Positions 39,565 through 64,000 are shown, counted from the first letter of the stretch. The stretch is 64,000 bases of DNA from Haliotis rufescens (GCF_023055435.1 NW_025963957.1:1984001-2048000), one strand, 5' to 3'. Numbers and translations are program-made. The notes: generated by a model from the sequence alone, not told the origin.

Positions 39565-42250
39565 ATGGGAAAGGTATATATCTATATCTGATTTATTTCT
39601 TAGAAATGGCTTATACCTTGAAATATATTTTAGATTGAACTCACTGAGAGCATTTATCTATGTGTAGAATTCATATATCTAAGTGAAATGAATATGTTAT
39701 CTTCATTATATTCTTAATGTGTGATACCGTTACGTTAAAAGTAGCATTTTATCATTTAGAGTGAGTGAGTATGGTTTTACGCCGCTTTCAGCGATATTCC
39801 AGCAATATCACGGTGGTTATCATTTAGAAACGGCGGGCGATATTGTCATCAACACATTGAAATGTATATATTTATAACAACTATTCAAAAGGTAGTAATC
39901 CTCAATGTTTAAAGGTTATGGTTCAAATGGGCCGTTTATTCTAGAACCTTTTGGAAAAAAAGGGACATCACAGCAATAAAATATCCCTTTTACTATGACA
40001 TAAGTATAAGGGTGCGCTGTACACTATACATAATATGGCCAATTATAAGATGTAGTTTTTTTGGCATTCAGTGTATATACAGCATCGCAGCGATAGTTTG
40101 CCTCGTCGCCATGACGACGGCCCTTCCCCCTCTCCCCACTCCCGCCTGCTATTCCAAGCAACTTTCGTCTGACCAAAGCTATGACCTCAGCTTTGTCTGC
40201 AATGACGGAAGACAATACCCCGAGTAAGTACATTTAGCAACGTAGCAAACAATTGACAGGACAGGTCGGTTTTATTTCGTTAGAAACGTCCTTTTTCGCT
40301 AGCGAAAATACCATTTGAATTTCCATATATATTAATTCAAATGAAAACGAGTCATATTTATACATAAGGCGTAAGTACCAATAAGTCAAAATGTCGATAT
40401 ATATTCATTTTGTATGACATACCACGTACGTTTGAGTCGAATGTATATGTTATAAGAGTTAATGTACCGTTAAGTCGAAGTGTCTGACATATTCACTTTG
40501 GACTATATAACATGTACCTCTAAGTGGCATAACCGACATGCGTTGATGCACCGTTAGGTCGAAATGTCTGACATTTTACTTTGTCTCCAGACAGGAGATC
40601 GAGGAGGCTCTGTACTACGCCGACGATCACTGGCGTATCTACCTCAACCTGACATCCACCTGCTTCCAGGACCAGGACACCTACTTCTTGAACAAACAGT
40701 AAGTGACAAATCCGGAATAATGAATCTGGATTAGGGAGTAATGTCCCTATAGTTAATTTAATCGTCCACGATAAGCACGTCTTGAAAACTGGTTCACCAT
40801 CCACTATCAATGACTTTGATAATTCATGAGAAACATACTGATAAAATGTAGAAAGAGAACATTAAAATATTGTGGTCTAATGTTCATTGCTCTATACAGT
40901 GAAAAGCTCCATGTTAACAAAATAACGTTACTGTTAAATGTTGTACGTTGTGTATTTAGTTCAATGCTTGTTTTCCTGGTATCCATACGAATTATCATGC
41001 CAGATATTCACTTCCCCCTTTAGCCATTCCCGTAGTTCTTTCAATAAGTATATTTGAGACCATGACATGTACAAATGAATTGCTGGTGTTGGCGAATGTT
41101 ACATTATTCAACATATATTGGCGAATGTTACAGTATTCAACATATATTGGCGAATGTTACAGTATTCAACATATATTGGCGAATGTTACAGTATTCAACA
41201 TATATTGGCGAATGTTACAGTATTCAACATATATTGGCGAATGTTACAGTATTCAACATATATTGGCGAATGTTACATTATTCAACATATACTGGCGAAT
41301 GTTCAATTTCAACATATATTGGCGAATGTTACATTATTCAACATATATTGGCGAATGTAACATTATTCAACATATATTCTGGAAACGTTATTTATTTGAC
41401 CTTGACATTGCAGCTCTGAGCCCAACTACTACAAGTTGAAGAGCGTGTGCAACACCACTCGTACCATGGTGCACACCATCTATGCCATGGACGGTCAAGT
41501 CTGCCACGTTGTCCGCCCTATGTCCCAGAAAGTCTTCTACGCCACATGCGGGTAGGTACACAGCTATGTTATTTTAGAAAGTTCTTATATGTTACTAAAA
41601 CTCATAAAGATGTATTAATGAAGAAGGTTTGATTCTAAAACATACAGACGCCGACAAAATCAAACAAATAATTCTTGGAGTAGTTTGAAATTGTTTTTAT
41701 AAATTTTAGTATTCAAAGGAAGCTTAAGCGAATCAAAACCCTTTACGTATATTGTCCACATTCATATATACACATTTATTGTATAAAAATAAAGGTATAA
41801 AGGATAAAGAACTTTTGCGAAATAAAGGATTATCGACAGGGCAATAATGATAACAATCTACATATCGATACTTAATGACTTAAATATTACTTATTTACGT
41901 TATTAAATATGTATTGTTTGTTTTACAGAGGAGAATGTAACCTTGGTTACGACGGCGTGACCGGCTATCACTGCATTCAACGCGGCATCACCTACCGCAA
42001 CTTCCTCGGTTACTGCCGTCTCCCCGACTCCGCAACCTTCCCAGAATCTTCCCCCATCTATGCTCTTGACCCCTCCGTCGACAACTTCTACGACCCCCGT
42101 GTTGCCCCACCCACCCACCGCATGCAGCACACCCCCCTCAAGAGCGGGGGCCACTACAAACCCAAGGGCTACTTCACGGAGTTGAGCGTTACCCTCCCAA
42201 GCTACTGCGGCTGCAGGGGATATTTCTGCCCCCACGACAGGATTCTTTAG
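39565..42250 (+). CDS. Secreted Spaetzle-like cystine-knot protein, type A, copy A1 (242 aa)
   Basis: Exons 39565-39573, 40072-40223, 40591-40698, 41414-41551, 41929-42250 (GT-AG, phases 0,2,2,2; 729 nt). Signal peptide MGKCIYSIAAIVCLVAMTTA; prodomain C..D..YP..EI..AL; knot VCNTT...QKVFYATCGGEC...CIQR...LPSYCGC. Confidence 0.88.
41087..41380. repeat. 29-bp minisatellite (ttggcgaatgttacagtattcaacatata) in intron 3 of A1
   Basis: About 10 tandem copies; only a single related unit at the equivalent position in A2 (about 53461-53492). Confidence 0.95.
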
Positions 42251-42899
42251 ATAATGACTACGTTCTTTAAGGCACTGGTACGATTTGAACCTGGACTAGT
42301 GGACCAATGAACCAAAGTAAAACCAATTTTTTATACAAGCATTTCATTTTTGATAAATGAAAACTATTTTTTAAGAACCAAAATACTTTACGATTTTTTA
42401 ACAATCTTTTCAACGAATTGGAAATTGCAAGTGTTATTTTGTACACAGGTCACTTTTTTCAAATTATGCTTCTGTTAAACTTATAATTTTTTTGCACTTT
42501 TATACCACAATGTGATCTCGGTCTTAAGTTGGCAAATATGTTAATTGTAAATATTTTGCGAATTCCATGTAAATACATCCAACAGGATGTTGTGAATATG
42601 TATTTATATGTTCCATCTTTGTACAGTATAAACTGACATCATCATTACTTGTGCGCGCATGTATTTTATGTACAGATAATAATATGTGAAAATAAAAGCA
42701 ACATGAAAATATGTACTGTTTCTGCTTTGATGATTATTGCTAATTTTGGCCAATGAAACATAAACATGACTATATCTGACTGATTTCACATTGGTCGAAG
42801 ACACAAATGCATAATTAGAACTTAAGTGAAACTCCGTTAATACGGACCCGGTATTCCGGAATCACACTCCTCCGTCCGATCACTGTGGTGAGTGAACGT

Positions 42900-43390
42900 A
42901 CGTACATACAGTTGCTCTTCTCAAGACAGTATGACAAGAGGGATGACTTCAACTTTCCAATAGTCAACTTTCAATTTGTGCCAAACGATATTCCTGCCGC
43001 TCCAGCCTTTGGTGTCTGCATTTCACAACTCTTTCGTTACAATCGAGCAGGTTCTTGCCACGAACATTTTAAAACAGCGTCACACGTCTCCATACTCCAT
43101 ACAGCTGTCTGATCTTGGTTACAGCAGTCAAAACCTCAGCAAAGCATTCAAAACGTTTTATATTAGATATGTGGAGGACATTTACCAATTTGAAGCACCA
43201 GTGACAAAGATGATGCCCGATGCAATTAATCTGTTTTGACTTGTACGATATGCTCCGTGTTGTTTTCAGGTGAACCGTTAACTTGCCTTTGCATGTGTTT
43301 ATGACGGATGCCAGCGGTTTGGCAGGATACGCTCACCTTTTCCCGAACCTGGTATCGTTACTATTTGATAGTGATTCATAAACAGATGCT
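42900..43390 (+). mobile_element. Penelope-like element RT C-terminal fragment
   Basis: YDKRDDFNFPIVNFQF...IPAAPAFGVCISQLFRYNRA. Confidence 0.8.
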
Positions 43391-43842
43391 TTTGATGCAG
43401 TCGGGACCGTACAAAAGGACTCTCCTTTTAGTGAAGGATTTATGAAAATCTTTGTTTTTGTAACTATTTGATAATAGATTAAATCGGACATTTGTTCATC
43501 CAGATGATGGTACATATACTATTACTGTCCAGATAAACGGTGTCGTTGTATATAAAAAAATATTTACCATTGACAAAAATCTAACTGATTTATTAAAATA
43601 TATCAACTCTGTAAAGACACGAATATTTTACCAACAATAACCAACCATCAGTTGCCTGTAAATATGCCAATCTAGAACACCTGAACTACACCAGTGGTAA
43701 TTGTTCCGATATGATGGTGCTCTCAGATTGTAATTTTTCTTCTTTTCGTTATGAAATAATCCCCCACGTCGCTTGCAGCTTCCATGCTTCCACGTCTATA
43801 AGTTCATGACAAAACATCGACGATACCCTTCCAGACATTGTA

Positions 43843-44140
43843 GGGACCGCCTCCGTGGTCTAGTGGTAGAGCGTCCGCTCGGAGAGCGGGAGGTCCGGGG
43901 TTCGATCCCCGACCGCGTCAAACCAAAAGACGTTAAAAGATGATACTTGTTGTTAGGTTGTCTGGCGCTCGGCATTAAGGCGCTAAAACAAGGACTGGTC
44001 GGCACGGAGTCAAAAGTGTCTGCACTATAAATCGGCCTCAGCCCGGACTAGTATAAACAGTCACACACACACACATGCACGTCGCTATATAGGTGCAATA
44101 ATTTTGGACGTGACGGTAAACCACATTTCACCTCACCCAC
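43843..44140 (+). mobile_element. tRNA-derived SINE, family 3 (conserved central-domain type)
   Basis: gtggtctagtggtagagcg...ggttcgatcccc head, ggcgctcggcattaagg core, (cacct)n tail. Decayed relatives near 25440-25620 and 60080-60270. Confidence 0.75.
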
Positions 44141-44169
44141 CTTCAGACATTGTATCCATCGGACTCAAA

Positions 44170-45800
44170 GTCAATGATATTTATTGTATGTAAGGCCTCC
44201 GGCCCATATACAAAAGGGTTACAAATAAGTAGTTTTTACATATTTGGATATATACTCTATATATATACTTATTTCTGAGGGAAATTGCATTATTAACATA
44301 TACAACCTATTTTAATATGACAGCATCTTCTTTTGAAAAAAGAAGAGAAAAAACAGGTACGGGATAATTTGACAGATAGCGTTCTCGTATAAACTGGTTT
44401 CTTAGATCACAATAATAAGGACATACAAAAGTAAAATAAATTAAATTTTATATAGCTGAATGACATAATGGGCATCACCTCTTCGACTTTTCTTCCTTCA
44501 TTTATCATGAGATCTAACAATCCGAGCCTAAATTGAATAAAAAGACGTCGAAGGGTTTCATTCTTTCATTCAGTGCCACCTGACCCCTCTTCTATAATAT
44601 GACAATATTTCTTTTATCATAGTTAACTGATTGATAATTTCCACTCTTTGGTGAAACATTCTAAAATGTTAAGCTGTTATTGTAGTCCAACAACAGAATT
44701 TGATACTAAAATGACATCATCGGCAAAAAGAAGCATCAAAATGTCCGTTACATCTGGGAACATGTGAAGACCAAGTTTACCCTTAGCCACAATTTCATAA
44801 TATAATTCATTAATAAAAAATAAGAACAATATCGGGCTCAAGATACATCCTTGTCCTAAGCCAACAGGATAGTCAAAGAAGTACACATGATATATTATTT
44901 GAATACATAGCTTTTAATAAAGAGTACATTTCCCCCAGAAGACCAGTAGTTCTTAAACAGTACTATAGTTTATAACGATCAACGGAGTCAAAAGCTTATT
45001 TTTTTAAAAATCGACAAAGGCTACATACACTTTGTGCTTACGACGTGATAGACATTTTTGAATAATCGCATATAATGCGAATATACGATCTGAAGTTGAG
45101 TACTTTTTTCTAAAACCAGCTTGAGTTTCGGGAATTTTATCACGCATGTTAGCCAAATTCGTAATCCTAGAATTAAGTACTGATATAAAAATCTTTCCAA
45201 GAATACTCATTAAGGATATTCCCCTATAATTGTCCGGATTGTTTAAAAACTCCTTTCGTGTGTATTAGTATAATTACCGAACAAGACCAGCTTCTGGGAA
45301 ATATACCACTGTCAAACATCCTATTGAAACATTTTTGACGAAAAGGCCTCATCTCAAATTTGGAACATTTTATCATATCAGTAACAATATGGTCAGGACC
45401 AGCAGCTTCCCACAGTTTAGATGCATTATAGCGTCCAGAATTTCATCCTGTGATAGGTGATTCTAAAATATGTTTGTCAACAACAGTATAACATGGAGAG
45501 GAAATATCCATAATATCGTCAAACCAACACTGTCAGTGTTGAAAACAGTGTAATTGGAAAAAAAAAACTTTCATAAAACGTATATGCCACTAAGCCTTTG
45601 AGATACTATCTATTCTATTTGTCTGCTTCTTAATGAACGTATTTGTTTCCAAAACTAAGAAGGAGAATGGATAGTATCACCATGTGTATTAGCCTAAATT
45701 TACACAAGTCATATTTATATTTCCTACAGCAGAATTTGTTGTGATTTCTCTTTTTGCAGTACATGTTTTTATTAGAGTCACTACGTCTACATCTAATTGT
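44170..45800 (-). mobile_element. Decayed non-LTR retrotransposon (RT domain)
   Basis: YRGISLMSILGKIF, QAGFRKKYST, VAFVDF, GLGQGCILSPILF, LLFADD. The 3' hairpin gggccggaggcct resembles that of 36773-37600. Confidence 0.85.
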
Positions 45801-46002
45801 ATAATTGTCGCAATTGTGTGAGTGAGGTTAACGCCGCTTAGAACCACGTTAATTCAGTAATATAACAACAAATCAGCTTAATATTGGAGGAAAGCCCCAA
45901 AGTAGCTGAGTGATGAAATGAAACCAACGGGCACGTCTGTAGTGTTGACAGACAAGAGAACAATAATAAATTAACTAGCTGTTCTCTTCACAGTATAAGC
46001 TT

Positions 46003-46190
46003 TGTCTGTTTGTTGTCTAACGCCGCACTCAGTAATAGTCAAACTATGTGACGGCGGTCTGGAAAAAATCGAGTCAAGACCGAAATTGGGATACGATGAC
46101 ATGCATCGACCAAGTCAGCGAGCCTGACCACCCGATCCCGTTAGTCGCCTCTTCCGACAGACATAGTCGCCTCTTACGACAAGCATGAGT
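46003..46190 (-). mobile_element. SINE-like repeat, family 4
   Basis: Homologous to 34292-34555. Confidence 0.7.
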
Positions 46191-46896
46191 TGCTGTCAGC
46201 GTACAGGCTGCTTTCAACGGGGAGCTCCCGTGTGCCTGATTAGGATGCCAGTATCTCATGCTTACAGTGCCTGCCGACTAAAATATGAGCTGGGTTCTTT
46301 TAGACTTTCCTCCATGTCGTGGATAAGCTGAATTTAGACACTGGTGTTTTGAATAGTTTTCGAGTTGTATACAGAGGCGATAAAAGCCTTTTCGTTATCA
46401 CACGACATCTCTGCTAAAAACTGAGTCCATTATATGATTCCGACTACCTAGTTCATAAGAAACGTGTTTATAAATCACTGTGAAATTGTGATGAAAGGTC
46501 ACTTAACACAGGCTACAGATGCTTACTTCTTAAAAGCAGCTATCAATTCATAAAGGGCTTGGTATTTTTTGTTTTATGTAATAAAATCACAGGACTCTTT
46601 ACAGAAGTTTATTTAAATAAATTGCCTGTTTTGTGACGATTCCCAAAGGGACACCATGCTCCATTGTCTGTTGCCCATTTTCAATGACTGCAATAATATT
46701 AATGTGAGACATTGACACATTGTGTCTGTGTAATGAGAATAACTATTTGTTACTTGACTGATCGAAATAAAAAAACTTTAAAAAAAATGTGCAGATGGGT
46801 ATTGCATATTGCTCTAATGCAATTTGGCCCAAATCTAAACTCGCGTTAGGTTCAACGAACTACCTGGAAAGAATTGACAACGAAACATTGGAGCCA

Positions 46897-47170
46897 CATG
46901 TGCGTATGTGTGTGCGTATGCGTATGTGTATGTGTATGTGTACGTGAATGCGTATGTGCATGCGTATGTGAATGGGTATGTGTATACGTATGTGTATGTG
47001 TATGACTATGTGAATGCGTATGTGTATGCTAATGTGTACGTGAATGCGTATGTGTATGCGTATGTGTATGTGAATGGGTATGTGTATACGTATGTGTATG
47101 CGTATGCATATGTGTATGTGTATGTGAATGCGTATGTGTATTCGTATGTGTATGTGTATGTGTATGCGTG
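46897..47170. repeat. (TATGTG/TATGCG)n hexamer microsatellite
   Basis: Directly visible. Confidence 0.9.
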
Positions 47171-47559
47171 GGCTTCGGGAAGAACTGTGTCATTCTATGT
47201 TCTCTTGTGTCGAGTGATTCAATTTGTATGCATAATATCATCATTCTCTTTGAACTGATAGTTTTGAACACTTTGTAATTCTGGAACTTGATGTGTTGTT
47301 GTAAGAGATTTCGCTACATGTTTGGTATAACTTTGATACAGGGTTCTAAAATAGCTCACCCATAATATAGATTACAAGGGGGATTTATATGTCTTATTGT
47401 CATGGTTATACCCATATTATCAGTTACCAGTGAGTTAAATGACCCACTACATGCCAGAACGAGTGATGCATGTCAACGTATCCCTTTTGCGTAGTCCCAC
47501 AACTCCCGCTGATACAGAGATATAGCACAACGAGGAAACGTTGTATTATCTTTAGCTAG

Positions 47560-48140
47560 CATCCCCATGGGCACCAACTGTGCTCCCATTCTTGCTGTCC
47601 TGTTTCTTAATGCATATGAGTCGGGATTTCTTTTCAGATTGGCAAAAGTCAAAACAAGGTAATTTGGCCAAGATGTTTAACCTGGGCTTCATGTGTATCG
47701 ACGATCTGATAACGTTCAATAACTATCAAATAGTCAATTCACTTCCTCTGACGTACCCACCTGAACTACAAATTTAGGAGACCAGTGAGACCGCCTCATC
47801 TGTTTCATGTTTCAATCTATGGACAAAGAATCAGAGTGACAAAACACTCTCCACGAGACTGTATGACAAGAGGGATGACATCAACTTTCAATAAGTCAAC
47901 TTTCCATTCATGTCAAGCAGCTCCACCCTTTGGTGTCTACAATTCATAACTTTTGAGATACAATCGAGCATACCAAGATTACAAACATCATCGTGCGACT
48001 TTTGCTCAGAAGTTGTTTGATCAAGGTTACAACATCCAAGGCTCCAAGCTTACAAAGGTTTATGGTAGACATGAGGAGGACATTTCCAAATGTGACGCAT
48101 CGGTTGATAAAAACATGACGTCCGATGCTTTTATTTATTT
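47560..48140 (+). mobile_element. Penelope-like element RT fragment (decayed)
   Basis: IPMGTNCAPIL, CIDDLITFNN, YPPELQI, LYDKRDD. Confidence 0.8.
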
Positions 48141-48308
48141 TGAACAGGGATGTTGGTGGATGTCAATGTTCAGTTAGCCATGTGACGTAACATGGAAAGT
48201 CTACTTGTTCATATTGTTTTTGTCACAACTAGGCAAACAACAAGTTTGCTTTCGGTTTGTTTTATATTCATTTTGTATAAACCATTCACAATAAAAAACA
48301 CCGAAAAA

Positions 48309-48400
48309 GAGTGAGTGAGTGAGTATGGTTTTACGCCGCTTTTAGCACTATTCCAGCCATATCACGGCGGGGGACCCCAGAAATGGGCTTAACACATTAC
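48309..48400 (-). mobile_element. SINE family 1, 3' fragment
   Basis: (gagt)n tail and ttttacgccgcttttagc. A similar fragment lies at 39760-39815 in A1 intron 1. Confidence 0.75.
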
Positions 48401-48744
48401 ACCATAAAAGAAAATACACAAGTATTATTCAGAGAGATTTATTATTACACAAAGTTGGCAACACAACAAAATGTACACGTTATGTACAATATAAACAAAC
48501 TATTTACATGTGCGAGCATGATATATTTACAATGATAATATATAATGTCACAAATACTTCAAAATCAATACGATTAAAAGCATTTTTGTAAGGTCGAAAT
48601 AAACAAAGTTCACAAAACATTGTCCTTCTTGTTCTCAAGTGTTCCTAACATAAACGAATAAATGTTTGTATTCGGCATGACGCTGAGTCCCACTATTACA
48701 CATGCGTAAAAGTACGACTTCGCAGAGGGAGTGTAAACCATGGT

Positions 48745-51093
48745 TTACACAAACTGATACTTGAGACATTCGTATTTCTTACAGCTGCATCCGGTGGGGA
48801 TGGTGACGCGGGTTCTGCGGCACTGCTTGATCTCGCCGGGACAGAAGACGTAGATATCACGTTCAACCATGCCGTCGGGGACGCAGTAGTGGTGTTTCAC
48901 CTCCGTGGTGTCCATGACGCAGTGACCTCTGGAGAAAAGAGATGATGGTGAATATTGTGTAATAATACTTTTTTGTACAAGCCTCAAATGTAATACCGAC
49001 GTGTACATTATAAAAAGACCTTTTAACATTTTTGAATTGTGCGACTCAGAATCAGACCAAACGTAAATTGAAGACGTATGTTGCGCATATTGTTTATTAA
49101 TACCTCTTATTCCCAAAATTAGAAACATAAGACCCATGTTACTTACAAACCCCAAACCACCATGAACTTGAAGGAAATCGTTTATCATGAATACTAGCAT
49201 ATGAAAGCTGGACATGTTTGGTCAAGCTAATCGTGTGACGTACCCGCATTGAGCGACTTCAATTCCCTGGGCTTCAGGCATGATGACGTAGCAGACCTCT
49301 CGGCGCCCGTTCGCGGTGTTGGTCCACCAGATTCTCTCCAGAAGCTCGGTGTTCTCGGAACACAGATCCTTGTAGCGGTAGGCGGGGTAGTGGCTGGAAT
49401 ATACCACAAGCATGGTTTAAACAGCTGTAGTGCAATAATTATAGCATTGCGTTCTTGAAGAAATGTCTGTGCGGCTGGAGTTTAATGCCGCGTTTCAGCA
49501 ATACTCCAACCTACGGTGGAGTGAACCAGGCATGGGATTGACACAGTCGAACTTGGTTTCTGAGAGTGAGTGAACGTTTAACAACAAGTCTACTCCATCG
49601 TCCATTATACAATTGAGTCGTGTGAAACATGGAGATGACATCACTGATCCGTTTGTCTCGTCATATAAATTGATAATATTGTCACATCATAAACAAGGTA
49701 AAAGACTGTTTTACATAGGTAAATTATTTTTTTAATGTAATAATGACAACTCATGGTATGACACATGTGATAGTACTCGAGTGATTTAGTAGGACACAAG
49801 ATCAAATTGAGTTGGGTGAGTCAGTGCGCTGAGTTTTGGAAAGCCACAGGTAACCTTCTAACATGTGTAAAAGTGACCTTCACCTGAGTGAGTCAGTTCC
49901 CTATTGAACAGTATATCAGATATATTGCGACGGGACAGCTTAATATGGGAGGGTAGCTCGAAGTGACGATGAAACGGGTGATGACTAGTAGCTTGGGTGG
50001 ATCATTTGTACCTACCCGGTGGAGTTCATCTTGTTGTGGAGGTAGCATCCCTGCACCAGCAGCATGTACTCCATTGCGTCGGGGTCCTGTTCCAGGGCGC
50101 TGAACACACGGTCACTGGAACAACCACGTTAACATCATTGTCAGCCTTCTCATACACTATGGTGTACAGACAACAGTAGAACTTACAGTGTGAACACACG
50201 GTCATTGGAACAACTAATAACGCATCTTTGCAATTTCACAACATAGCTTCTTAAAATTACAAAAGACGCGGGGGACAGAACCCGAGCCATACAGATGACA
50301 AGCGATGACATTTACAACTTGGCCATCCCGCCCTACTGCCTGAACTAATTTACAACATAAATGAATATAAAGCATACTTCGGATAAATATAAATAATATA
50401 AAATAATTATTTACCTGTTTGTTGTTTTCCTCAAATATTTATGCATACATTTTAAGGGAAACACAACATCAAAGCATATTTCTAGATAAAATACATACAC
50501 AGGGTATTTGTAGGACTTGTCGAAGCACAGCTTTTCCTTGGTAGGCCATTCGTACTGGGGGACGCCATTCTTGTCAAAGTAGCAGATTGGCTGTTTGGTC
50601 TTGGCGGAGAGGGCGCTGAAGATGCTGGAACCGTCACGGACGCGGGCACCAAACAAGGAAGACTTTCTGGATTTCAGGAGGCTAGCGAATCGGCTGGAGG
50701 TTGAGCCTCCCAGAGAACGCCCCCCGACAGGGGGTCGATTCCACGCCAAGGTGACGGCGGTGAGGGACATGAGAACGCATAATGTCACAAGAACTCTCTG
50801 GAAGAAATGAGAGACAGGGGTTGTCAGCAAATCGTAGAAACTGGATGATAATTGTTCATTGTCTATTGTGTATTAATGCTGTTGAATTTACAACTTCTAC
50901 AACTACTACTGTTACTACTGGTGCAACTGCTGCAACTATTATTACTACACTCAATATTGCATACAGCTGCGAACGGCGCTTAAAACAACTGTTAGATAGG
51001 ATATATACATCATTTAAACTACTCTGCACATAAATAAACTGTATATCAAGACATTAGCATCGTACACAGTTAGCAAAATATTCTACTTACCAT
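48745..51093 (-). CDS. Secreted Spaetzle-like cystine-knot protein, type B, copy B1 (244 aa)
   Basis: Exons 51093-51091 (ATG only), 50797-50499, 50114-50016, 49393-49244, 48928-48745 (phases 0,2,2,2; 735 nt). Signal MRVLVTLCVLMSLTAVTLA; prodomain LCFDKSYKYPVDRVFSAL; knot DLCSEN...QGIEVAQCGGHC...YCVPDG...IPTGCSC. Confidence 0.88.
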
Positions 51094-51178
51094 ATTTACA
51101 AACAAAGGACCAATCTATGTTAAAATAGTTACTGTAGCTGTGTACAGCGATGGCTGACTTGCTGGGGCCTTTCGCTCG

Positions 51179-54437: not shown

Positions 54438-57400
54438 ATGATGACTACGTTCATAAAGGGACTGATACAATATGAACAAAGACCAATTGAAGCCAGTTGT
54501 TTTCCACAAGCATTATTTTTAAATAAGTGAAAACTATTTTTAAAGAACCAAACTCTTTCTGATTTTTAGAAGCCTTTTCAAGTAAATGGAAATTACAAAT
54601 GTTATTTGGTTTACACTTCACTTTTTTCAAATCATTTCAGACTTACCTTTATTTTTTCCTCACTTTTATACCACAATGTGATATCGGTCTGAAGTTGGCA
54701 AATATGTTAATTGTAAATATTTTGCGAATTCCATGTAAATATTTACTATAGGATGTTGTGAATATGTATTTTATATGTTCCATCTTTGTACAGTATAAAC
54801 TGACATCATCATTGCTTGTGCGCGCATGTATAATATGTACAGATATTAATATGTGAAAATAAAAGCAACATGAAAATATATACAGTTTCTGTTTTGATGA
54901 TTATTGTTTAGTTTGGACAATATACACTGTAAATGTATTTCAGTAATATATAAAATATATATTTATCATATAATGGGTAGGTTTCTTAGCAGGATAAAGC
55001 CAACGGATAAAAACGATATCCGTTGGGGTCATATGCGGAAAGAGATGCAAATATCAAAGGTCAAGTGGGGACTACTTTCAGTGTTTATAAACAAACATGG
55101 CGTTGCCCTTGTCATTCGGCAACCGAGTCAGAATTAATCATCGGGAATCTGGATAAACTACATAGATAATTTCTATAATTATCAAAAGAACAGTCTAATA
55201 TACTTAAAATCAGTGTCTAGCTGTGACGCAGTAAGGCATTTTATAAGTTTTGGCAACTTTGGAGATATAAATTTCGAAACAATTTTGCGAGGGCACTAGG
55301 CCTAGCCAAGCGGTATCAGTAGCCATATCTGTGCTTGTTGACCTCTGCGGCTTGAAACCTTTTCCACAAATAAAAATAGTTGGATTTGGCAGAAATATAT
55401 TTGAATTGTTACCTTGTTTCGTTTGGTCGCTGTGTGTACATCTGATTGCATTTTTTAACGTTATGACAGGACAGGACTAGTTACTCTAGCGGACAGACCG
55501 ATGGATTGCCGCGAAATGCAAGTGAATAACAATTGTTGTTTTGCGTATATGTTGCTTCGCCACTCTATAAAAAACAGATTTCAGTTGGAACTATATTGGC
55601 TACTGTCACTGTCCGACTGACACATCACTTACCCTGTGACGTAATAAATATTAATGCGCGCTTTCCAGGAAAATTCGCAATGTTTAGGTTATGTTTGTGA
55701 GAGAGTGAAAGCGATTTTCAAGTACAGATTAAAGAATGACATTTTATGATAAAGAGGTTATCACGCTTGTGTGTTTGGGGATGGTAAACATCCTGTATTA
55801 GGAATAAACACTATGTATTCCTAATGAAGGATATTTACCTTCCCCAAACACANNNNNNNNNNNNNNNNNNNNNNNNNNNNNNNNNNNNNNNNNNNNNNNN
55901 NNNNNNNNNNNNNNNNNNNNNNNNNNNNNNNNNNNNNNNNNNNNNNNNNNNNNNNNNNNNNNNNNNNNNNNNNNNNNNNNNNNNNNNNNNNNNNNNNNNN
56001 NNNNNNNNNNNNNNNNNNNGGATGGTATATATATTTATATATATATAATTTATATATAACTGAAATATAAATTATATATAACTGAAATACACCAATACAC
56101 CAATNNNNNNNNNNNNNNNNNNNNNNNNNNNNNNNNNNNNNNNNNNNNNNNNNNNNNNNNNNNNNNNNNNNNNNNNNNNNNNNNNNNNNNNNNNNNNNNN
56201 NNNNNNNNNNNNNNNNNNNNNNNNNNNNNNNNNTAGTCCTAAATAGGTCCATTATATTGGTGCTGTCAAGATAACATTTTTCTTCTTTTTGTTATGACAT
56301 AAACCGCACGAGAGGTTGTGGTTGTCGAGGTTGTGGTCGACAGTGTGAAAAGTCCTTCACGTCGCATGCAGCTGAGCGAGGGTCTGCAAGTTCATGACTA
56401 AACCAAAACCATCCCCTTCCAAACATTGTATCCATCAAATTCACAATTAACTGTTTGATTGATTCTATAAGTTGGCAAATAAATAAGAAAACCATACAAC
56501 TTTATGGATAACAACTTTTGGTTTATTGCATATAGCGACGTTTCGATGTAGATTCTTACACCGTTACCAAGCTGGAGTGACAACGACCAAGCGATCAAAT
56601 TTACAATTGTGTGCATGAGGTTAACGTTGTTTCTGTAATGTAACAACGAATTCGAATCACCTTAATATTGGAGGAAATCCCCAAAGTAGCTGAGTGATAA
56701 CTGTTGCCAGTTCAGTGAACCCAAACCAACGAGACGTTGACAGACAAGAGCACACATGAATTCATAAGCTGCTAACACTCTTCACTGTATAAGCTGCTTT
56801 TAATTTGGTGCTCCTGTGCGACTGATTAGGTTGTCAGTACCTAATGCTTGCAGTGCCTGCAGAGTAAAACAAGAAGTGAGAGGTCGGGACTGGTGACTTG
56901 GCTCAACGCTCCCGACAGTGTAGATCGTTGGTCAAAAAAAAAAATGCTTTCAATCACTGGTTGGCCCATTCCAGTCTCGATTATTAACAGGTCGCGCTGT
57001 ATAGCTGAAATAATGCTGACTGATTCACGCACTTACCTAATAAAACGAAGTAAGTGTATCTGATAAGTAAGGCGAAGCTGACGTGTTCACTGTACGTAAA
57101 ACAAGTATGGTTCTTAATATCTTTCTGCGAATTTGAAAAACTAAAGAATTGATAACATGATATGGATCCCTTTAACACGTTCCTTCATGTCGTGAGTGAG
57201 CTGGGTTTATATAACTTTTTCAATAGTATTTTCAAAAGCGACGGCACCTTTTCCATTACCATAAGAAATTGATGCTAAAAGCAGAGTCCATTGTACGATT
57301 CGAGCTATATCATAAGCATGTGTTTATGAATCACAATCAAACAGTGATGAAACCTAAATTTACAGCAAAAACTTACTTCTTAAACATAATAATTTTAATG

Positions 57401-58409
57401 AAGAGTTCTGTTTGCTTTATGTAAAAAATACACGGGACCCTATACATTCGAATAAATTGCTTGTTTTGCGAGATACATTTTATCAAGATTTTGACAGATA
57501 CAGAACGCGATTTCCATTGAGGCTTATTTAAGCGATGTGTTAATCTAGGTCTTCCAGCCCTAAAGTGTCACCCAGGGATTGTCGTTAAGTGAAACCCACG
57601 GCCACAGCTATGATGTTGGCTATCCAGTCTTAGATTCGAACCCACGACGACCGGTAACTGAGCAACAGAGGACCGCAACCAGACAAAGTAGGATGGGAGC
57701 CATATATGAGTTGTGGCAATTCAAGTGATAAAGTACCACCGTTTCAATACTTGTTACAAGAGCTTTAGCCATAGTCTTAAAGAGGTCATAACATTATCAT
57801 AAAGATAAGTCGTGCCGAGAAGGTTCAGATAAATGCTGTAAAAATACCACCATTTGCAATAAATATATTTTGATTGCTCATACTGTCGACAACTATCATC
57901 TCATCTTGACGGAAGTCAATGCATCACCTCAAAACAGCTCATATATTGTGTAATATAACACCATCTAAAACGGTAGCCTACATATTAGAGACACAATAAT
58001 GATCTCAAACAAACAGAAATATCTGCCTCAGGTGATTAACTCTCACATTGACTGATGTGGATACTCTCAATAATAATAATAGCACAAAGACAATGATCAT
58101 TTCCTGACATGTTTTGACATTTTAGGGTTGTTTGATTGATCAGATGCATTATCATTACACCGTGTTCGCTGAAATATATACATGCAGTGACTCACTTTGG
58201 ATGAATCATAGTACAGAAGGGTTAGGGAGATTGAACTGTAGGAAAAACAAATGCGAAACGTGCTCGATAACGAAATCAGGGACAAAACTGTTGTGCGTAA
58301 ACAATTGGAAATAATAACTGATGTATATTTATTGGAAAAATTACTCTACATCCAGGCTGAAAATATTTTTCTGTTTGTAAGAGAGGCAATGCATTGCTTA
58401 CAGATGTTC

Positions 58410-59922
58410 TGAAATTGTCATTGATGATGGCTATGTTTTGGCTGTGTAGGATATTTTGAGGCGGAATCTAACGGCGATATTGTCATTAATGATGGTTATG
58501 TTTTAGCTGTGTGGGATATTTTGTGGCGAAATCTAACGGCGATATTGCCATTGATGATTGCTATGTTTAAGCTGTGTGGGGTATTTTGTGGCGGAGTCTA
58601 ACGGCGATATTGCCATTGATGGTGGCCATTGATGATGGTTATGTTTTGGCTGTGTTGAGTATTTTGTGGCGGAATTTAACGGCGATATTGCCATTGATGA
58701 TTGCTATGTTTTAGCTGTGTGGAATATTTTGTGTCGGAATCTAACGGCTATATTGTCATTGATGATGGCCATTGATGATGGTTATGTTTTGGCTGTGTGG
58801 GATATTTTAAGGTGGAAACTAAAGGCGATATTGTCATTGATGATGGTTATGTTTTAGCTGTGTGGGATATTTTGTGGCGGAAAATAACGACGATATTGTC
58901 ATTGATGATGGCCATTGATGATGGTTATGTTTTGGCTGTGTGGGATATTTTGCGGCGGAATCTAACGGCGATATTGCCATTGATGATTGCTATGTTTTAG
59001 CTGTGTTGGATATTTTGTGGCGGAAACTAACGGCGATATTGTCATTGATGATGGCCATTGATGATGGTTATGTTTTGGCTGTGTTGAGTATTTTGTGGCG
59101 GAATTTAACGGCGATATTGCCATTGATGATGGCCATTGATGATGGTTATGTTTTGGCTGTGTTGAGTATCTTGTGGCGGGATCTAACGGCGATATTGCCA
59201 TTGATGATTGCTATGTTTTAGCTGTGTGGGATATTTTGTGTCGGAATCTAACGGCTATATTGTCATTGATGATGGCCATTGATGATGGTTATGTTTTGGC
59301 TGTGTGGGATATTTTGTGGTGGAAACTAAAGGCGAGATTGTCATTGATGATGGTTATGTTTTAGCTGTGTGGGATATTGTTTGCGGAAAATAACGACGAT
59401 ATTGTCATTGATGATGGCCATTGATGATGGTTATGTTTTGGCTGTGTGGGATATTTTGTGGCGGAATCTAACGGCGATATTGTCATTGATGATTGCTATG
59501 TTTTAGCTGTGTGGGATATTTTGTGGCGGAAACTAACGGCGATATTGTCATTGATGATGGCCATTGATGATGGTTATGTTTTGGCTGTGTTGAGTATCTT
59601 GTGGCGGGATCTAACGGCGATATTGCCATTGATGATTGCTATGTTTTAGCTGTCTGGGATATTTTGTGTCGGAATCTAACGGCTATATTGTCATTGATGA
59701 TGGCCATTGATGATGGTTATGTTTTGGCTGTGTAGGATATTTTGTGGCGGAATCTAATGGCGATATTGTCATTGATGATGGTTATGTTTTAGCTGTGTGG
59801 GATATTTTGTGGCGGAAACTAACGAAGATATTGTCAGTGATGATGGCCATTGATGATGGTTATGTTTTAGCTATGTGGGATATTTTGTGGCGGAATCTAA
59901 CGGCGATATTGCCATTGATGAT
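58410..59922. repeat. 63/78-bp minisatellite (gatattgtcattgatgatg[gccattgatgatg]gttatgttttggctgtgtgggatattttgtggcggaatctaacggc)
   Basis: About 20 tandem units in two length variants. Confidence 0.95.
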
Positions 59923-60146
59923 GAGTATTATTCAAAGTTATATTACCATCGTTGAAGTTCATTGCTCGAGGTGTCCTGATATTATCTGTGATGGTGGCTA
60001 TTTTTTTACTTTGCCGGGTATTTTCGCGGGAAACTAAAGAACAATTAGCTCCATAGTATGCTGCCCATACGGAAGGTAACTGATATTGTCTCAGTGTAAT
60101 GACAGCATTCGCAGATGGGTATTGCTTGAATGCCGTTTGGCCCAAG

Positions 60147-60204
60147 CACACGCACACGCACACGCACACGCACACGCACACGCACACACACACACACACA
60201 CACG
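60147..60204. repeat. (GCACAC)n/(AC)n microsatellite within a SINE 3' end
   Basis: Directly visible. Confidence 0.85.
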
Positions 60205-60809
60205 TAACTATATAAGTGAAATAATCTTGAAGGCGACGTTGAACCCAATTTCACCTCATCTCACCTCACTCCACTTCTCGTCAGTAATAGGCAAACTACA
60301 AGTTTTATTCAGTTGTGTTTTATTATCTGTAAATTATTCACGGTAAACATCACCAAAAAATCTGAAAAGTATTATTCATAGTGATTTTATGTGTTTCACA
60401 AAGTTGGCATCAGATAATGGTAACAAATATGTTGCGAACTCCACAGATAAATATACACGTTATGTACAGAGTAAACAAACAACTTACACGTGCGCGCATG
60501 ATATATGTACAGATGATAACATATAATGGTAAAACAGATTCCTCAAACTTAAGATCATTAAAAGTCTATTTACAAGTCGAAATATACCTGTCATATTGAG
60601 AAATTTTTATGAAGAACATAAAATCTGTTACAAACATTTTCCGGCCTGTTCAATTATGTTCGTAACATTTACGTATTCGTAAACATGTCGTAAGAGATCT
60701 CTGTTTGTGTATACATATCTGTATTTGGCATGACGTAGAGTCCTTGCAATTACGCCACTATTACACATGCGTAAAAGTACGACTTCGCAGAGGGAGTGTA
60801 AACCATGGT

Positions 60810-62977
60810 TTACACAAACTGATACTTGAGACATTCGTATTTCTTACAGCTGCATCCGGTGGGGATGGTGACGCGGGTTCTGCGGCACTGCTTGATCTCG
60901 CCGGGACAGAAGACGTAGATATCACGTTCAACCATGCCGTCGGGGACGCAGTAGTGGTGTTTCACCTCCGTGGTGTCCATGACGCAGTGACCTCTAGAGA
61001 AAAGAGATGATGGTGAATATTGTGTCATAATACTTTTTTGTACAAGCCTCAAATGTAATACCGACGTGTACATTATAAAAAGACCTTTTAACATTTTGAA
61101 TTGTGCGACTCAGAATCAGACCAAACTAAAATTGAAGACGTATGTTGCGCATATTGTTTATTTATACCTCTTATTCCCAAAATTAGAAACATAAGACCAA
61201 TGTTACTTACAAACCCCAAACCACCATGAACTTGAAGGAAATCGTTTATAATGAATACTAGCATATGAAAGCTGGACATGTTTGGTCAAGCTAATTGTGT
61301 GACGTACCCGCATTGAGCGACTTCAATTCCCTGGGCTTCAGGCATGATGACGTAGCAGACCTCTCGGCGCCCGTTCGCGGTGTTGGTCCACCAGATTCTC
61401 TCCAGGAGCTCGGTGTTCTCGGAACACAGATCCTTGTATCGGTAGGCGGGGTAGTGGCTGGAATATACCACAAACATGGTTCAAACAGCTGTAGTAGGAA
61501 CATAATAGTATGTACGTCTTCAATAAACGGCTGGATAGATCACATGACATGACGCCGCGTTTCATTAATAGTCAAACTCACGGTGGGGTGAACCAGATAT
61601 AGGATTGACACAGTCGAACTCGGTTTCTCGGAGTGAGCGAACCTTTATCCACTAGGCCACTCCATCGCCCTTTATACAATTGATCATTTAGAGATGACAT
61701 CACACATTCTGATTTTTCATCATATAAACATATAATGATAGTATCGTGCCATAGTACACAAGGTAAAAGGCTGTTTTACAAAGGTAAATTGAATATATTT
61801 ATGCAACAATGACAGCTGTTAGTGTAACACAGGTGATGGTACCTTAGTGATTTGATGGTCGTTATTGCTTCGACTCCAGATCAAAATAACGAAGACATAG
61901 TAACAATTTACTACTGTGGCGAAAGCCAAGGGTAACCGCCTAGTATAAGAGTGTGTGAGTTGGGTTTAACGCCGCTTTGAACAGTATTTCAGATATAGTG
62001 CGAGGGGACAGCTTAATATGGAAGGGTAGCTCGAAGTGACGATGAAACGGGTGATGACTAGTATCATCTGTACCTACCCGGTGGAGTTCATCTTGTTGTG
62101 GAGGTAGCATCCCTGCACCAGCAGCATGTACTCCATTGCGTCGGGGTCATTTTCCAGGGCACTGAACACACGGTCACTGGAACAACCACGTTAACATCAG
62201 TGTCAGCCTTCTCATACACTATGGTGTATAGACAACAGTAGAACTTACAGTGTGAACACACGGTCACTGGAACAACGTATCTTTGCAATTTCCCAACATG
62301 GCATCTTGAAATATTGAAATACGGGGATCTTACCCGACCCTTACAGATATGACAAGCGATGATATTTACAACTTGACTGTGCCGCCTGACTGCCTGGACT
62401 AATTTAACAGCATAAATTAAAATACTAAAGCATATTTTGGAAATAGTATGAAGACAATTTGCCAAAACGAAGAGAAGAAAGAATTATGATATATGTATAC
62501 ATATGCATTTTAATAAAAACAACAACACCAGACCATGTGTTTAAATAAAATACATACACAGGGTACTTGTAGGACTTGTCGAAGCACAGCTTTTCCTTGG
62601 TAGGCCATTCGTACTGGGGGACGCCATTCCTGTCAAAGTAACAGATTGGCTGTTTGGTCTTGGCGGAGAGGGCGCTGAAGATGCTGGAACCGTCACGGAC
62701 GCGGGCACCAAACAAGGACGACTTTCTGGATTTCAGAAGGCTAGCGAATCGGCTGGAGGTTGATCCTCCCAGAGAACGCCCTCCGACAGGGGGTCGATTC
62801 CACGCCAAGGTGACGGCGGTGAGGGACATGAGAACGCATAATGTCACAAGAACTCTCTGGAAGAAATGAGAGACAGGGATTTTCATAAAATTAGAAAACC
62901 TAGTTGTTAATTATTATTTTTTGTTTCGTTTTATGATTTGGAATATGTCAAAACTATTGATATACGATTACAGCTGA

Positions 62978-63017
<40 letters not shown>

Positions 63018-63391
63018 GTTGCTGCTCCTACTACTACAACTACGAGCAGTACTGCTGCTATCACTCCTACTCATTCTGNNNNNNNNNNNNNNNNNNNNNN
63101 NNNNNNNNNNNNNNNNNNNNNNNNNNNNNNNNNNNNNNNNNNNNNNNNNNNNNNNNNNNNNNNNNNNNNNNNNNNNNNNNNNNNNNNNNNNNNNNNNNNN
63201 NNNNNNNNNNNTGACGTTTCTACTACAACCACTGCTACTTCCAATATTTTAGGCAACAGCTGCAAACGATGTTTACAATTCAACTACAAGATAATATTAG
63301 ATAGAATATCTGTTAAAATACTGAGACCTTAATAAACTGCTTTGCAAGACATTACAATCGTACACAGTTTGCAAAATATTCTACTTACCAT
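60810..63391 (-). CDS. Secreted Spaetzle-like cystine-knot protein, type B, copy B2 (244 aa; 250 aa if the microexon is used)
   Basis: Exons 63391-63389, 62856-62558, [62266-62249 optional], 62176-62078, 61457-61308, 60993-60810. Nearly identical protein to B1. N gap in intron 1. Confidence 0.87.
62978..63078. repeat. (CTA)n microsatellite in B2 intron 1
   Basis: Directly visible; runs into an N gap. Confidence 0.9.
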
Positions 63392-63476
63392 ATTTACAAA
63401 CAAAGGACCAATCTATGTTAAAATAGTTACTGTAGCTGTGTACAGCGATGGCTGACTTGCGGGGAGCTTAAGCTCG

Positions 63477-63657
63477 CTTTTATTCCCTCTCGATTCGGAA
63501 GGAGGAGCATATTTCAGCCAATCAAAAGTGGCGTTTTTGATTGAATGCCTTTGACGTCACGCGGCAACACTTCTTACTGAAAACAATGGCGGCAGTGGAT
63601 GACGTATCTACAACTGTCACGTGAAAAGAGGGCAGGGTACGAGTCGAGAGTATATAA
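63477..63657. promoter_or_regulatory. Candidate bidirectional promoter B2/A3 (about 180 bp)
   Basis: TATA-like element (minus) about 63477-63484, CCAAT 63518-63522, TGACGTCA 63552-63559, CACGTG 63618-63623, TATATAA 63651-63657. Confidence 0.7.
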
Positions 63658-63728
63658 GGAGACACTGGCCCAGTCTGAGCCAGCGACTGTGAACACCTCA
63701 AGAACTGAGCTTCACACATCATCCTACC

Positions 63729-64000
63729 ATGGGAAAGGTATATATCTATATCTGATTTATTTCTTAGTAACGGCTTATACCTTGAAACATATTTTAGACT
63801 CAACTTATTGCGAGCATCCATCTTTGTGTAAATTTGCTGGCGCCGAATATTGTCAGCTTTATTATATTCTTAATGTGTGAGACTGTTAAGGTAAAGATAT
63901 CATTTTATCATTTTAGAAACAAGTGGCGCTATCCCTTTTCACTGTATATATAAATATATAAATATATGATTATAAGAAGTACTCTTTGCGTTTCAGTTTA
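63729..64000 (+). CDS. Type A Spaetzle-like gene, copy A3 (first coding exon MGK 63729-63737 plus intron 1; continues beyond the window)
   Basis: Promoter, 5'UTR, ATGGGAAAG|gtatat and intron 1 are homologous to A1 and A2. Confidence 0.75.

What the first reader, a model, noticed from the sequence alone, without database searches (positions are those of the whole stretch)
39565..64000. Tandem array of paired A/B Spaetzle-like cystine-knot genes: candidate two-subunit ligand system
Seen in sequence: two strongly diverged paralogues share intron positions and phases (0,2,2,2), a signal peptide, a C...YP....AL prodomain and an aligned cysteine scaffold ending P..C.C. They are arranged A1(+), B1(-)/A2(+), B2(-)/A3(+) with a period of about 12.1 kb. 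Established: this scaffold is the Spaetzle/neurotrophin-type cystine knot, and other cystine-knot hormones (bursicon, GPA2/GPB5) act as heterodimers of paralogues. Inference: A and B are co-expressed and co-amplified at about 1:1 dosage, possibly as a heterodimeric Toll-type ligand or as an abundant secreted structural or clotting protein.
Basis: partly seen in the sequence, partly recalled or inferred. Interest (0 to 1): 0.8.

Follow-up and report, generated by a model that had tools for sequence, protein, structure and literature searches.

The report
Abalone paired cystine-knot-like gene array
Red abalone carries four tandem copies of a two-gene cassette encoding two old sister forms (A and B) of an unnamed, snail-restricted family of secreted cysteine-rich proteins; both genes are expressed, but they could not be shown to be Spaetzle relatives or to work as a pair.

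Summary
The window (Haliotis rufescens, contig C179) has intact 5-exon genes A1(+), B1(-), A2(+), B2(-) and the first exon of A3. All have GT-AG introns with phases 0,2,2,2, and spliced RNA contigs from four runs confirm the B1 and A2 introns. Genome-wide the array is exactly 4 A plus 4 B, strictly alternating, with no other copy.

A and B are true paralogues (hhalign 95.6%, E 1e-8). The three N gaps lie in intergenic DNA or in B2 intron 1, so no coding frame is affected.

"Spaetzle-type" is not supported as membership. Pfam and PDB profile searches find nothing, and profile comparison with abalone IL-17, Noggin and DAN domains is negative. A cystine-knot fold remains likely but unproven. For it: a C-x-G-x-C...C-x-C scaffold, protein-language-model neighbours in the Spaetzle/NGF/IL-17/Noggin clan, and weak structural matches to cystine-knot growth factors. 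Against it: both AlphaFold models have pLDDT about 37.

No convertase site separates the "prodomain" from the knot.

The head-to-head B/A promoter is the seam of a duplicated convergent A> <B cassette. A:B copy number is 1:1 in four Haliotis species. Heterodimerisation is untested.

The scan met this array before on adjacent DNA (s1-811087); my tests agree with that follow-up.

The parts
39565..42250 (+). Gene A1 (LOC124141447, 242 aa). Exons 39565-39573, 40072-40223, 40591-40698, 41414-41551, 41929-42250.
   Evidence: DNA reading and splice check. 100% identical to P0016 / XP_046365422.2.
39393..39564 (+). A1 core promoter and 5' UTR (E-box CACGTG, TATATAAGG). This is the left edge of the duplicated cassette.
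   Evidence: Alignment of the A1/A2/A3 upstream regions; self-BLASTN.
48745..51093 (-). Gene B1 (244 aa). Exons 51093-51091 (ATG only), 50797-50499, 50114-50016, 49393-49244, 48928-48745.
   Evidence: RNA joints 48928|49244, 49393|50016, 50114|50499 and 50797|51091.
51094..51681 (.). B1/A2 head-to-head spacer (588 bp). B promoter (CRE TGACGTCA, CCAAT, AATAAAA box) plus about 250 bp of extra DNA plus the A promoter. This is a duplication seam.
51682..54437 (+). Gene A2 (242 aa). Exons 51682-51690, 52114-52265, 52620-52727, 53524-53661, 54116-54437.
   Evidence: RNA joints 51690|52114, 52265|52620, 52727|53524 and 53661|54116.
60810..63391 (-). Gene B2 (244 aa). Exons 63391-63389, 62856-62558, 62176-62078, 61457-61308, 60993-60810. 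The N gap 63079-63211 lies in intron 1.
63392..63728 (.). B2/A3 head-to-head spacer (337 bp). The seam is at about 63578-63585, where the right end of the cassette meets its left end.
63729..64000 (+). Gene A3: exon 1 (63729-63737, MGK) and the start of intron 1. The rest lies beyond the window.
42251..48744 (.). Unit 1 tail-to-tail spacer. It is not conserved between units. It holds a decayed reverse-transcriptase fragment (44677-45376, minus strand) and microsatellites.
54438..60809 (.). Unit 2 tail-to-tail spacer. It holds two N gaps (55853-56019, 56105-56233) and a 65/78/143-bp satellite (58411-59923).

Best explanation
The region is the first 2.5 units of a four-unit tandem array in red abalone. 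Each unit is a convergent gene pair, A> <B. A and B are ancient paralogues of an unnamed gastropod family of secreted, N-glycosylated, disulfide-rich proteins of about 240 aa.

Each protein has two parts: a conserved helical N-domain with 3 cysteines, and a C-domain whose nine shared cysteines include C-G-G-x-C and C-x-C. That is the ring signature of growth-factor/cytokine cystine knots.

The array grew by unequal crossing-over of the whole cassette. This keeps A:B at 1:1 and created the short head-to-head B/A "promoters" as junction seams.

Both genes are transcribed, correctly spliced and under purifying selection.

Inferred, not shown: the proteins are extracellular cystine-knot-type ligands or binding proteins made in bulk. 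They probably act in the same process, possibly as a non-covalent A/B complex. B carries one extra cysteine that could make covalent B-B dimers.
For: - Gene models, intact ORFs and intron phases.
- Spliced RNA contigs in 4 runs from 3 studies and 2 species labels.
- A/B homology: hhalign Prob 95.6%, E 1.2e-8 over 108 columns, with introns in the same columns.
- Exactly 4 A + 4 B, alternating, and nothing else in the 1.33-Gb genome even with an A+B profile at E<=1.
- 1:1 copy number in H. cracherodii, H. asinina and H. rubra.
- Orthologous copy pairs between H. rufescens and H. cracherodii.
- Purifying selection: A1/A2 dN/dS 0.34, B1/B2 0.09.
- B is 88-99% identical across four species.
- Seam: the B4 upstream region stops matching exactly where the A1 upstream region starts matching.
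- Invariant C, C, C-G-G-x-C, C, C, P-x-x-C-x-C, C scaffold in A, B and the Lottia homologue.
- ESM Atlas: for both A and B the nearest clusters with a Pfam family are Spaetzle/NGF/Noggin/IL17, scores 0.90-0.92 with 178-193 shared features.
- VIA-align: the five best rows, and every listed match to the C-domain of model A, are cystine-knot growth factors (sclerostin Z 5.9, gremlin 4.8, vWF CTCK 4.5, VEGF 4.5, IL-25 4.4, NGF 4.1).
- Foldseek: the weak lists for both models are dominated by the same superfamily.
- Charge complement: A N-domain -8, B N-terminal extension +9.
Against: - No profile method sees a known family. Pfam gives nothing at E<=10 for full-length A, B or Lottia. PDB hmmsearch is empty. 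hhalign against abalone IL-17, Noggin and DAN gives 0.1%, 0.4% and 2.6%.
- Both AlphaFold models are unreliable (mean pLDDT 37.6 and 37.5).
- All structural matches are below the tools' noise levels, and VIA-align on model B finds no cystine-knot protein at all.
- Atlas scores of 0.9 occur by chance in 4-10% of shuffled proteins.
- Contig depth cannot rank expression, and the tissues are unknown.
- Nothing here tests physical A-B interaction, and the cysteine counts (12 vs 13) do not fit a one-disulfide heterodimer.
Confidence: 0.6

Rival explanations
1. A and B are divergent members of the Spaetzle family proper. They would be secreted pro-ligands, cleaved to a C-terminal knot dimer that activates abalone Toll-like receptors.
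For: - The Atlas top named clusters carry PF16077 Spaetzle.
- Motifs around the knot (Q-x-V-x-V-x-x-C, C-x-Q/P..., P-S/T-x-C-x-C) resemble the Spaetzle consensus as I recall it. This is a lead from memory, not a test.
- The own-genome scan finds no real exon-level Spaetzle match, so the niche may be open.
Against: - The Pfam Spaetzle HMM misses full-length A, B and the Lottia protein at E<=10 and misses the array in the genome scan.
- The ring spacing C-x3-C is the TGF-beta/DAN/PDGF type, not the wider NGF/Spaetzle ring (plus textbook knowledge).
- There is no conserved cleavage site between the N-domain and the knot. The N-domain is as conserved as the knot.
- No Spaetzle chain appears among the 50 best structural rows.
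Confidence: 0.12
2. A and B form an obligate two-subunit (heterodimeric) cystine-knot ligand, on the logic of bursicon or GPA2/GPB5. Cassette amplification would preserve stoichiometry.
For: - Old paralogues are kept adjacent and amplified only together, at 1:1 in four species.
- Contig depths are similar in each of 4 RNA runs.
- Opposite net charge of the A N-domain and the B extension.
- B is under very strong constraint.
Against: - There is no interaction data.
- Cysteine parity is 12 vs 13.
- The cassette structure alone forces 1:1 copy number whatever the function.
- The shared promoter is a duplication seam, not an ancestral co-regulation device.
- Only an A-type homologue was found in Lottia. 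However, B was never searched exhaustively outside the word index.
Confidence: 0.2
3. They are abundant extracellular structural or effector proteins (haemolymph clot, mucus, matrix or egg-coat component) that work independently as homo-oligomers. Gene amplification would simply raise output.
For: - Four-fold amplification and high k-mer depth of the transcripts (up to thousands) in all four RNA runs.
- The N-domain is retained and no pro-protein processing site is present.
- An extra free cysteine in B could cross-link chains.
- The family is lineage-restricted.
Against: - B is far more conserved (omega 0.09; about 91% identity between H. asinina and H. rufescens) than typical structural or immune effector proteins.
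- Depth from contigs is not a valid expression measure, by the tool's own warning.
- No proteomic evidence was found in the literature search.
Confidence: 0.25
4. The C-domain is not a cystine knot at all but a new disulfide-rich fold. The C-x-G-x-C/C-x-C pattern and the language-model neighbours would then be convergent.
For: - All sequence-profile tests are negative.
- AlphaFold confidence is about 37.
- VIA-align on model B gives nothing.
Against: Three independent weak signals point the same way: the motif, the Atlas neighbours for both paralogues, and the structural rankings. The Pfam Sclerostin model also touches B exon 5 at E 0.01.
Confidence: 0.25

Closest known systems
Spaetzle / neurotrophin (NGF) cystine-knot ligands
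   Same: Secreted proteins of about 240 aa with an N-terminal region plus a C-terminal domain of about 100 aa or more ending P-x-x-C-x-C. They are the nearest protein-language-model neighbours. NGF is a weak structural match, Z 4.1.
   Different: No Pfam Spaetzle or NGF match. Narrow C-x-G-x-C ring. No cleavage site. The N-domain is conserved and holds cysteines. There are nine, not six or seven, C-domain cysteines.
DAN / CTCK / sclerostin-gremlin-norrin group, and PDGF/VEGF (8-membered-ring knots)
   Same: C-x-G-x-C ... C-x-C signature. These are the best, though sub-threshold, structural rows (sclerostin Z 5.9, gremlin 4.8, vWF CTCK 4.5, VEGF 4.5). Sclerostin tops the Foldseek list for B. 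The Pfam Sclerostin model matches B exon 5 at E 0.01.
   Different: hhalign against five abalone DAN domains gives only 2.6% probability. There is no Pfam DAN, Cys_knot or PDGF hit. The genome's canonical DAN genes lie elsewhere.
Heterodimeric cystine-knot hormones (bursicon alpha/beta, GPA2/GPB5)
   Same: Two diverged paralogous subunit genes kept together. Knot of the same ring type.
   Different: No sequence relationship was detected and no dimer evidence exists. These known hormones are single-copy neuroendocrine genes, not four-fold amplified and highly transcribed cassettes.
Mollusc IL-17 expansions
   Same: Lineage-specific tandem arrays of secreted cystine-knot cytokine genes. This genome has at least 52 IL-17 domain loci. 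The background is reviewed in PMC11087794.
   Different: hhalign between A+B and abalone IL-17 gives 0.1%. The IL-17 domain sits in one exon with a C-x-C-x-x-C pattern. No IL-17 locus lies in this array.
Lottia gigantea hypothetical protein LOTGIDRAFT_154424 (P0020)
   Same: The only full-length relative found outside Haliotis. It is A-type, 39% identical, with the same N-domain motifs and cysteine scaffold.
   Different: Shorter knot loop, an extra cysteine (C-V-C), and a KR site before the knot.

Membership tests
Spaetzle (Pfam PF16077) | Match to the family HMM at or above the gathering score | tested here: not met
   No hit at E<=10 for single exons, full-length A (P0016), B (P0001) or Lottia (P0020). 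The own-genome scan gives no hit in the array.
Spaetzle (Pfam PF16077) | NGF-like knot with a wide ring between knot cysteines 2 and 3, plus one intermolecular cysteine | tested here: inconclusive
   The sequence shows C-G-G-x-C, three residues between the cysteines, which fits the narrow-ring type. Which cysteines form the knot is not known without a structure.
Spaetzle (Pfam PF16077) | Proteolytic activation site releasing a C-terminal knot fragment | tested here: inconclusive
   Haliotis A has no dibasic or R-x-x-R site at all, and B has none at the domain junction. Lottia has KR there. Clip-protease sites cannot be predicted from sequence.
Spaetzle (Pfam PF16077) | Binds and activates a Toll receptor | not testable with these tools
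   Needs binding assays.
Cystine-knot growth-factor/cytokine superfamily | Six knot cysteines including C-x-G-x-C and C-x-C, conserved across the family | tested here: met
   Invariant or near-invariant in all A, B and Lottia sequences.
Cystine-knot growth-factor/cytokine superfamily | Fold: two long beta-hairpins tied by a knotted disulfide ring | tested here: inconclusive
   AlphaFold pLDDT is 37.6 and 37.5. Model A's C-domain matches only cystine-knot growth factors, but at Z<=5.9, under the tool's stated background level (typical best Z 7-8). Model B gives no such match in VIA-align. The Foldseek lists are enriched for the superfamily but have E>=0.05.
Cystine-knot growth-factor/cytokine superfamily | Independent similarity to named members | tested here: inconclusive
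   In the Atlas, all ten best named neighbours of both A and B fall in one clan (0.90-0.92, 178-193 shared features). This is a lead, not an alignment.
IL-17 (PF06083) | HMM or profile similarity to IL-17 domains | tested here: not met
   No Pfam hit. None of the 52 genome loci is in the array. hhalign gives 0.1%.
Noggin (PF05806) / DAN (PF03045) | HMM or profile similarity | tested here: not met
   The genome's Noggin and DAN loci lie elsewhere. hhalign gives 0.4% and 2.6%.
Two-subunit cystine-knot hormones (bursicon, GPA2/GPB5) | Two paralogous subunits that are co-expressed and heterodimerise | tested here: inconclusive
   Paralogy is shown. Both are transcribed at similar contig depth in 4 runs. 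Dimerisation is not testable here. Cysteine parity is 12 vs 13.

The most novel reading that the evidence does not exclude
A and B are the two subunits of a gastropod-specific heteromeric cystine-knot ligand, a new family unrelated in sequence to Spaetzle, IL-17, DAN or the glycoprotein hormones. Their convergent two-gene cassette would be amplified as a unit so that subunit stoichiometry stays 1:1 while output rises.
Probability: 0.2. Interest if true: 0.7.

Novelty: new variant of a known kind. Interest (0 to 1): 0.45.

Why it matters
Molluscs lack clear Spaetzle orthologues, and much of their extracellular signalling repertoire is unannotated. This is a strongly conserved, highly transcribed family without a Pfam model, present in a commercially and ecologically important genus. 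It is annotated only as "uncharacterized protein" in four abalone genomes.

If it is a new cystine-knot ligand pair, it would add a lineage-specific signalling or haemolymph system. It would also be a clean example of cassette amplification preserving subunit dosage. Even if it is only an abundant secreted protein pair, it is a usable marker and a candidate for abalone immunity, reproduction or mucus/matrix biology.

The analysis also corrects two tempting readings. The bidirectional promoter is a duplication seam, and the Spaetzle label is not earned.

Tried and rejected
- Pfam on each exon and on full-length database proteins: nothing except a sub-threshold Sclerostin touch.
- PDB profile searches with the A, B and A+B alignments: nothing real.
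- Word-index protein search with the B exon-2 frame, full-length B and full-length A: only Haliotis clusters.
- Exhaustive phmmer with A exon 5: the A protein itself, Lottia P0020, unnamed ENA fragments, and two spurious repeat proteins.
- Both AlphaFold jobs gave pLDDT about 37, so the Foldseek and VIA-align results are leads only.
- IL-17, Noggin and DAN membership were rejected by hhalign against domains taken from this same genome.
- The two marginal genome hits to the Spaetzle HMM are repeat or unrelated ORFs.
- Literature searches by accession and by topic found no description of the family.
- An ancestral bidirectional promoter was rejected in favour of a duplication seam.
- I never joined exons into a spliced sequence. 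Exons were searched one by one, and full-length work used proteins returned by the databases.
- The N gaps were not filled.


Full report
**What is there.** The window is Haliotis rufescens contig C179, bases 1984001-2048000. Self-BLASTN confirms a tandem period of about 12.1 kb. Positions 39430, 51547 and 63610 match one another, and 48690 matches 60755, at 82-95% identity.

I read the DNA on both strands and checked every border. This gives four complete genes and the start of a fifth.

| Gene | Strand | Span | Protein |
|---|---|---|---|
| A1 | + | 39565-42250 | 242 aa |
| B1 | - | 51093-48745 | 244 aa |
| A2 | + | 51682-54437 | 242 aa |
| B2 | - | 63391-60810 | 244 aa |
| A3 | + | exon 1 only, 63729-63737 | rest beyond window |

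- Each complete gene has five exons, GT-AG introns, intron phases 0,2,2,2 and an intact reading frame.
- Exon 1 encodes only M in B and only MGK in A.

**RNA evidence.** Logan contigs from four runs (three studies, two species labels) were laid on 48700-54500. They show joints with GT..AG (or CT..AC) ends at exactly the predicted B1 and A2 borders. Single contigs span all introns.
- These joints corrected my first guess for the B exon 3 acceptor from 50099 to 50114.
- Contig depths of A and B are alike within each run:

| Run | B depth | A depth |
|---|---|---|
| X1 | 1251 | 876-960 |
| X2 | 538 | 467-591 |
| X6 | 178 | 201 |

- In X4 both run into the thousands.
- The tool warns that contig depth cannot rank genes, and the tissues are coded. 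I therefore treat this only as a hint of similar abundance.

**Assembly gaps.** Gaps 55853-56019 and 56105-56233 lie in the A2/B2 tail-to-tail spacer. Gap 63079-63211 lies in B2 intron 1, next to a trinucleotide repeat. No exon or frame crosses a gap. The flanks are collinear with unit 1.

- A stop-free frame around B exon 2 retrieved P0001, a 245-aa "uncharacterized protein" of H. cracherodii.
- An exhaustive phmmer search with A exon 5 retrieved P0016. This is XP_046365422.2 (LOC124141447, H. rufescens), and it is letter for letter my A1 model.
- All full-length work used these database proteins.

**Are A and B related?** Yes.
- Pairwise BLASTP is weak, at 24-29% identity in exon 4 and the start of exon 5, plus a short 50% patch at the C-terminal C-x-C motif.
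- Profile-profile comparison of an A-only alignment (13 sequences) with a B-only alignment (12 sequences) gives 95.6% probability and E 1.2e-8 over 108 columns.
- Introns 1, 2 and 4 fall in identical columns and phases. Intron 3 lies within 4 residues, at an indel.
- The joint alignment shows a shared scaffold: C-Y...C...Y-P...C in the N-domain, then C, C, C-G-G-x-C, C, C, P-x-x-C-x-C and a final C.
- B has a unique basic, serine-rich extension of about 51 aa after the signal peptide, and one extra cysteine.
- A has a proline-rich loop about 46 residues longer between the last two blocks.

**Extent of the family.**
- In the 1.33-Gb assembly there are exactly four A and four B genes, all on C179 between 2.0236 and 2.0671 Mb. 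They alternate strictly as A> <B four times. An A+B profile finds nothing else at E<=1.
- NCBI proteins in the same 90% clusters give A:B gene counts of 4:4 (H. cracherodii), 3:3 (H. asinina) and 2:2 (H. rubra).
- Outside Haliotis I found only an A-type protein of the limpet Lottia gigantea (LOTGIDRAFT_154424, 39% identity) and unnamed ENA fragments.
- B-type relatives outside the genus were sought only with the word-index search. Their absence is therefore provisional.

**Evolution of the array.**
- H. rufescens A copies pair with H. cracherodii orthologues, so the multi-copy array predates that split. H. asinina and H. rubra copies cluster by species.
- Nei-Gojobori counts, summed exon by exon, give dS 0.122, dN 0.041 and omega 0.34 for A1/A2. 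For B1/B2 they give dS 0.058, dN 0.005 and omega 0.09.
- B is 88-99% identical across four species.
- The tail-to-tail spacers are not conserved between units and are filled with different repeats.

**The "shared promoter".**
- All A copies share about 125 bp upstream of the ATG, including CACGTG and TATATAAGG.
- A1 shares a further 30 bp or so with the internal spacers and then diverges.
- The last gene, B4, shares the B promoter (CRE, CCAAT, AATAAAA) only up to 187 bp upstream of its ATG. That is exactly where the A-side homology begins in the B2/A3 spacer.
- The head-to-head spacer is therefore the right end of the cassette joined to its left end. It is a duplication seam of an ancestrally convergent pair.
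- This agrees with the earlier follow-up on the adjacent window (s1-811087), and I tested it independently here.

**What fold or family?**
- Sequence profiles fail.
  - Pfam finds nothing at E<=10 for A, B or Lottia.
  - PDB hmmsearch finds nothing real.
  - Genome scans with the Spaetzle, NGF, IL17, Noggin, DAN and Sclerostin models hit other loci or nothing, never the array.
- hhalign of the A+B profile against domains cut from this same genome gives 0.1% for IL-17, 0.4% for Noggin and 2.6% for DAN.
- Both AlphaFold2 models are poor, with mean pLDDT 37.6 and 37.5.
- Three weak signals still agree on a cystine-knot growth-factor/cytokine fold.
  1. The conserved C-x-G-x-C and C-x-C motifs.
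  2. The ESM Atlas neighbours. For both paralogues all ten best named clusters are Spaetzle/NGF/Noggin/IL17 (0.90-0.92, 178-193 shared features).
  3. The structural rankings.
     - With VIA-align against 48,161 chains, every listed match to the C-domain of model A is a cystine-knot factor: sclerostin Z 5.9, gremlin 4.8, vWF CTCK 4.5, VEGF 4.5, IL-25 4.4, NGF 4.1, norrin 4.0.
     - The Foldseek lists for both models are dominated by the same proteins at E>=0.05.
- All of these sit below the tools' stated noise levels, and VIA-align on model B found none.
- I put the cystine-knot fold at about 0.65-0.7 and Spaetzle membership at about 0.1.
- From textbook knowledge, the narrow three-residue ring is that of TGF-beta/DAN/CTCK/PDGF knots, not the NGF/Spaetzle ring.

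**"Prodomain" and dimers.**
- The N-domain is as conserved as the knot between Haliotis and Lottia, and it holds three cysteines.
- Haliotis A has no dibasic site anywhere, and B has none at the domain junction.
- With 3+9 cysteines (A) and 3+10 (B) in the mature chains, the N-domain is probably disulfide-linked to the C-domain and retained.
- B has one unpaired cysteine, which suits a B-B or other covalent link. A has none. A simple covalent A-B dimer is therefore not favoured, but a non-covalent one is open.
- The A N-domain is acidic (about -8) and the B extension is basic (about +9). This is compatible with association but proves nothing.

**Verdict.**
Paralogous, co-amplified, co-transcribed secreted cysteine-rich proteins: yes. 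Spaetzle-type knot "established": no. Released prodomain: unlikely. Heterodimer: untested.
- I found no published description. PMC11087794 gives the background on invertebrate cystine-knot ligands.

Noticed in passing
window 51091-51093, 63389-63391 (B); 39565-39573, 51682-51690, 63729-63737 (A): The first coding exon holds only the start codon in B (ATG directly followed by GTAAGT) and only three codons (MGK) in A. The phase-0 intron right after the ATG is shared by both paralogues and confirmed by an RNA joint (50797|51091).
   Followed up: yes
window 41089-41378: A 29-bp minisatellite (10 copies, 95% match) sits inside A1 intron 3 and is absent from A2.
   Followed up: partly
window 58411-59923: A satellite of 65/78/143-bp units (about 10.5 copies of 143 bp) lies in the unit-2 tail-to-tail spacer. 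Strong GC skew there (+0.41 in 58001-60000).
   Followed up: no
window 44677-45376 (-) and 36773-37537 (+): Decayed retrotransposon pieces. The first has a reverse-transcriptase fragment (Pfam RVT_1, E 4e-7) in the unit-1 spacer. The second is a 254-aa ORF that looks like a LINE-type ORF tail, left of the array; it was not scanned.
   Followed up: partly
G000 C57:34.09-34.64 Mb, C512:0.79-1.0 Mb, C192, C451 and others: At least 52 IL-17-domain loci, most in two large clusters. C192, C451 and C512 carry near-identical hits with equal scores, which may be uncollapsed haplotigs.
   Followed up: no
G000 C113:4942817-4943413 (+) and 4962674-4963243 (-): Two Noggin-family genes 20 kb apart on opposite strands. 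One has a basic, glycine/arginine-rich insert of about 30 aa before the last knot strand.
   Followed up: no
B proteins, residues about 21-71 (window 50737-50585 in B1): A B-specific extension of 51 aa, serine-rich and very basic (pI 12), nearly invariant across four Haliotis species and absent from A and from the Lottia protein. Its role is unknown.
   Followed up: partly
window 51307-51562: The B1/A2 spacer carries about 250 bp that the B2/A3 spacer lacks (588 vs 337 bp between the ATGs). This is an insertion or deletion at the duplication seam.
   Followed up: partly
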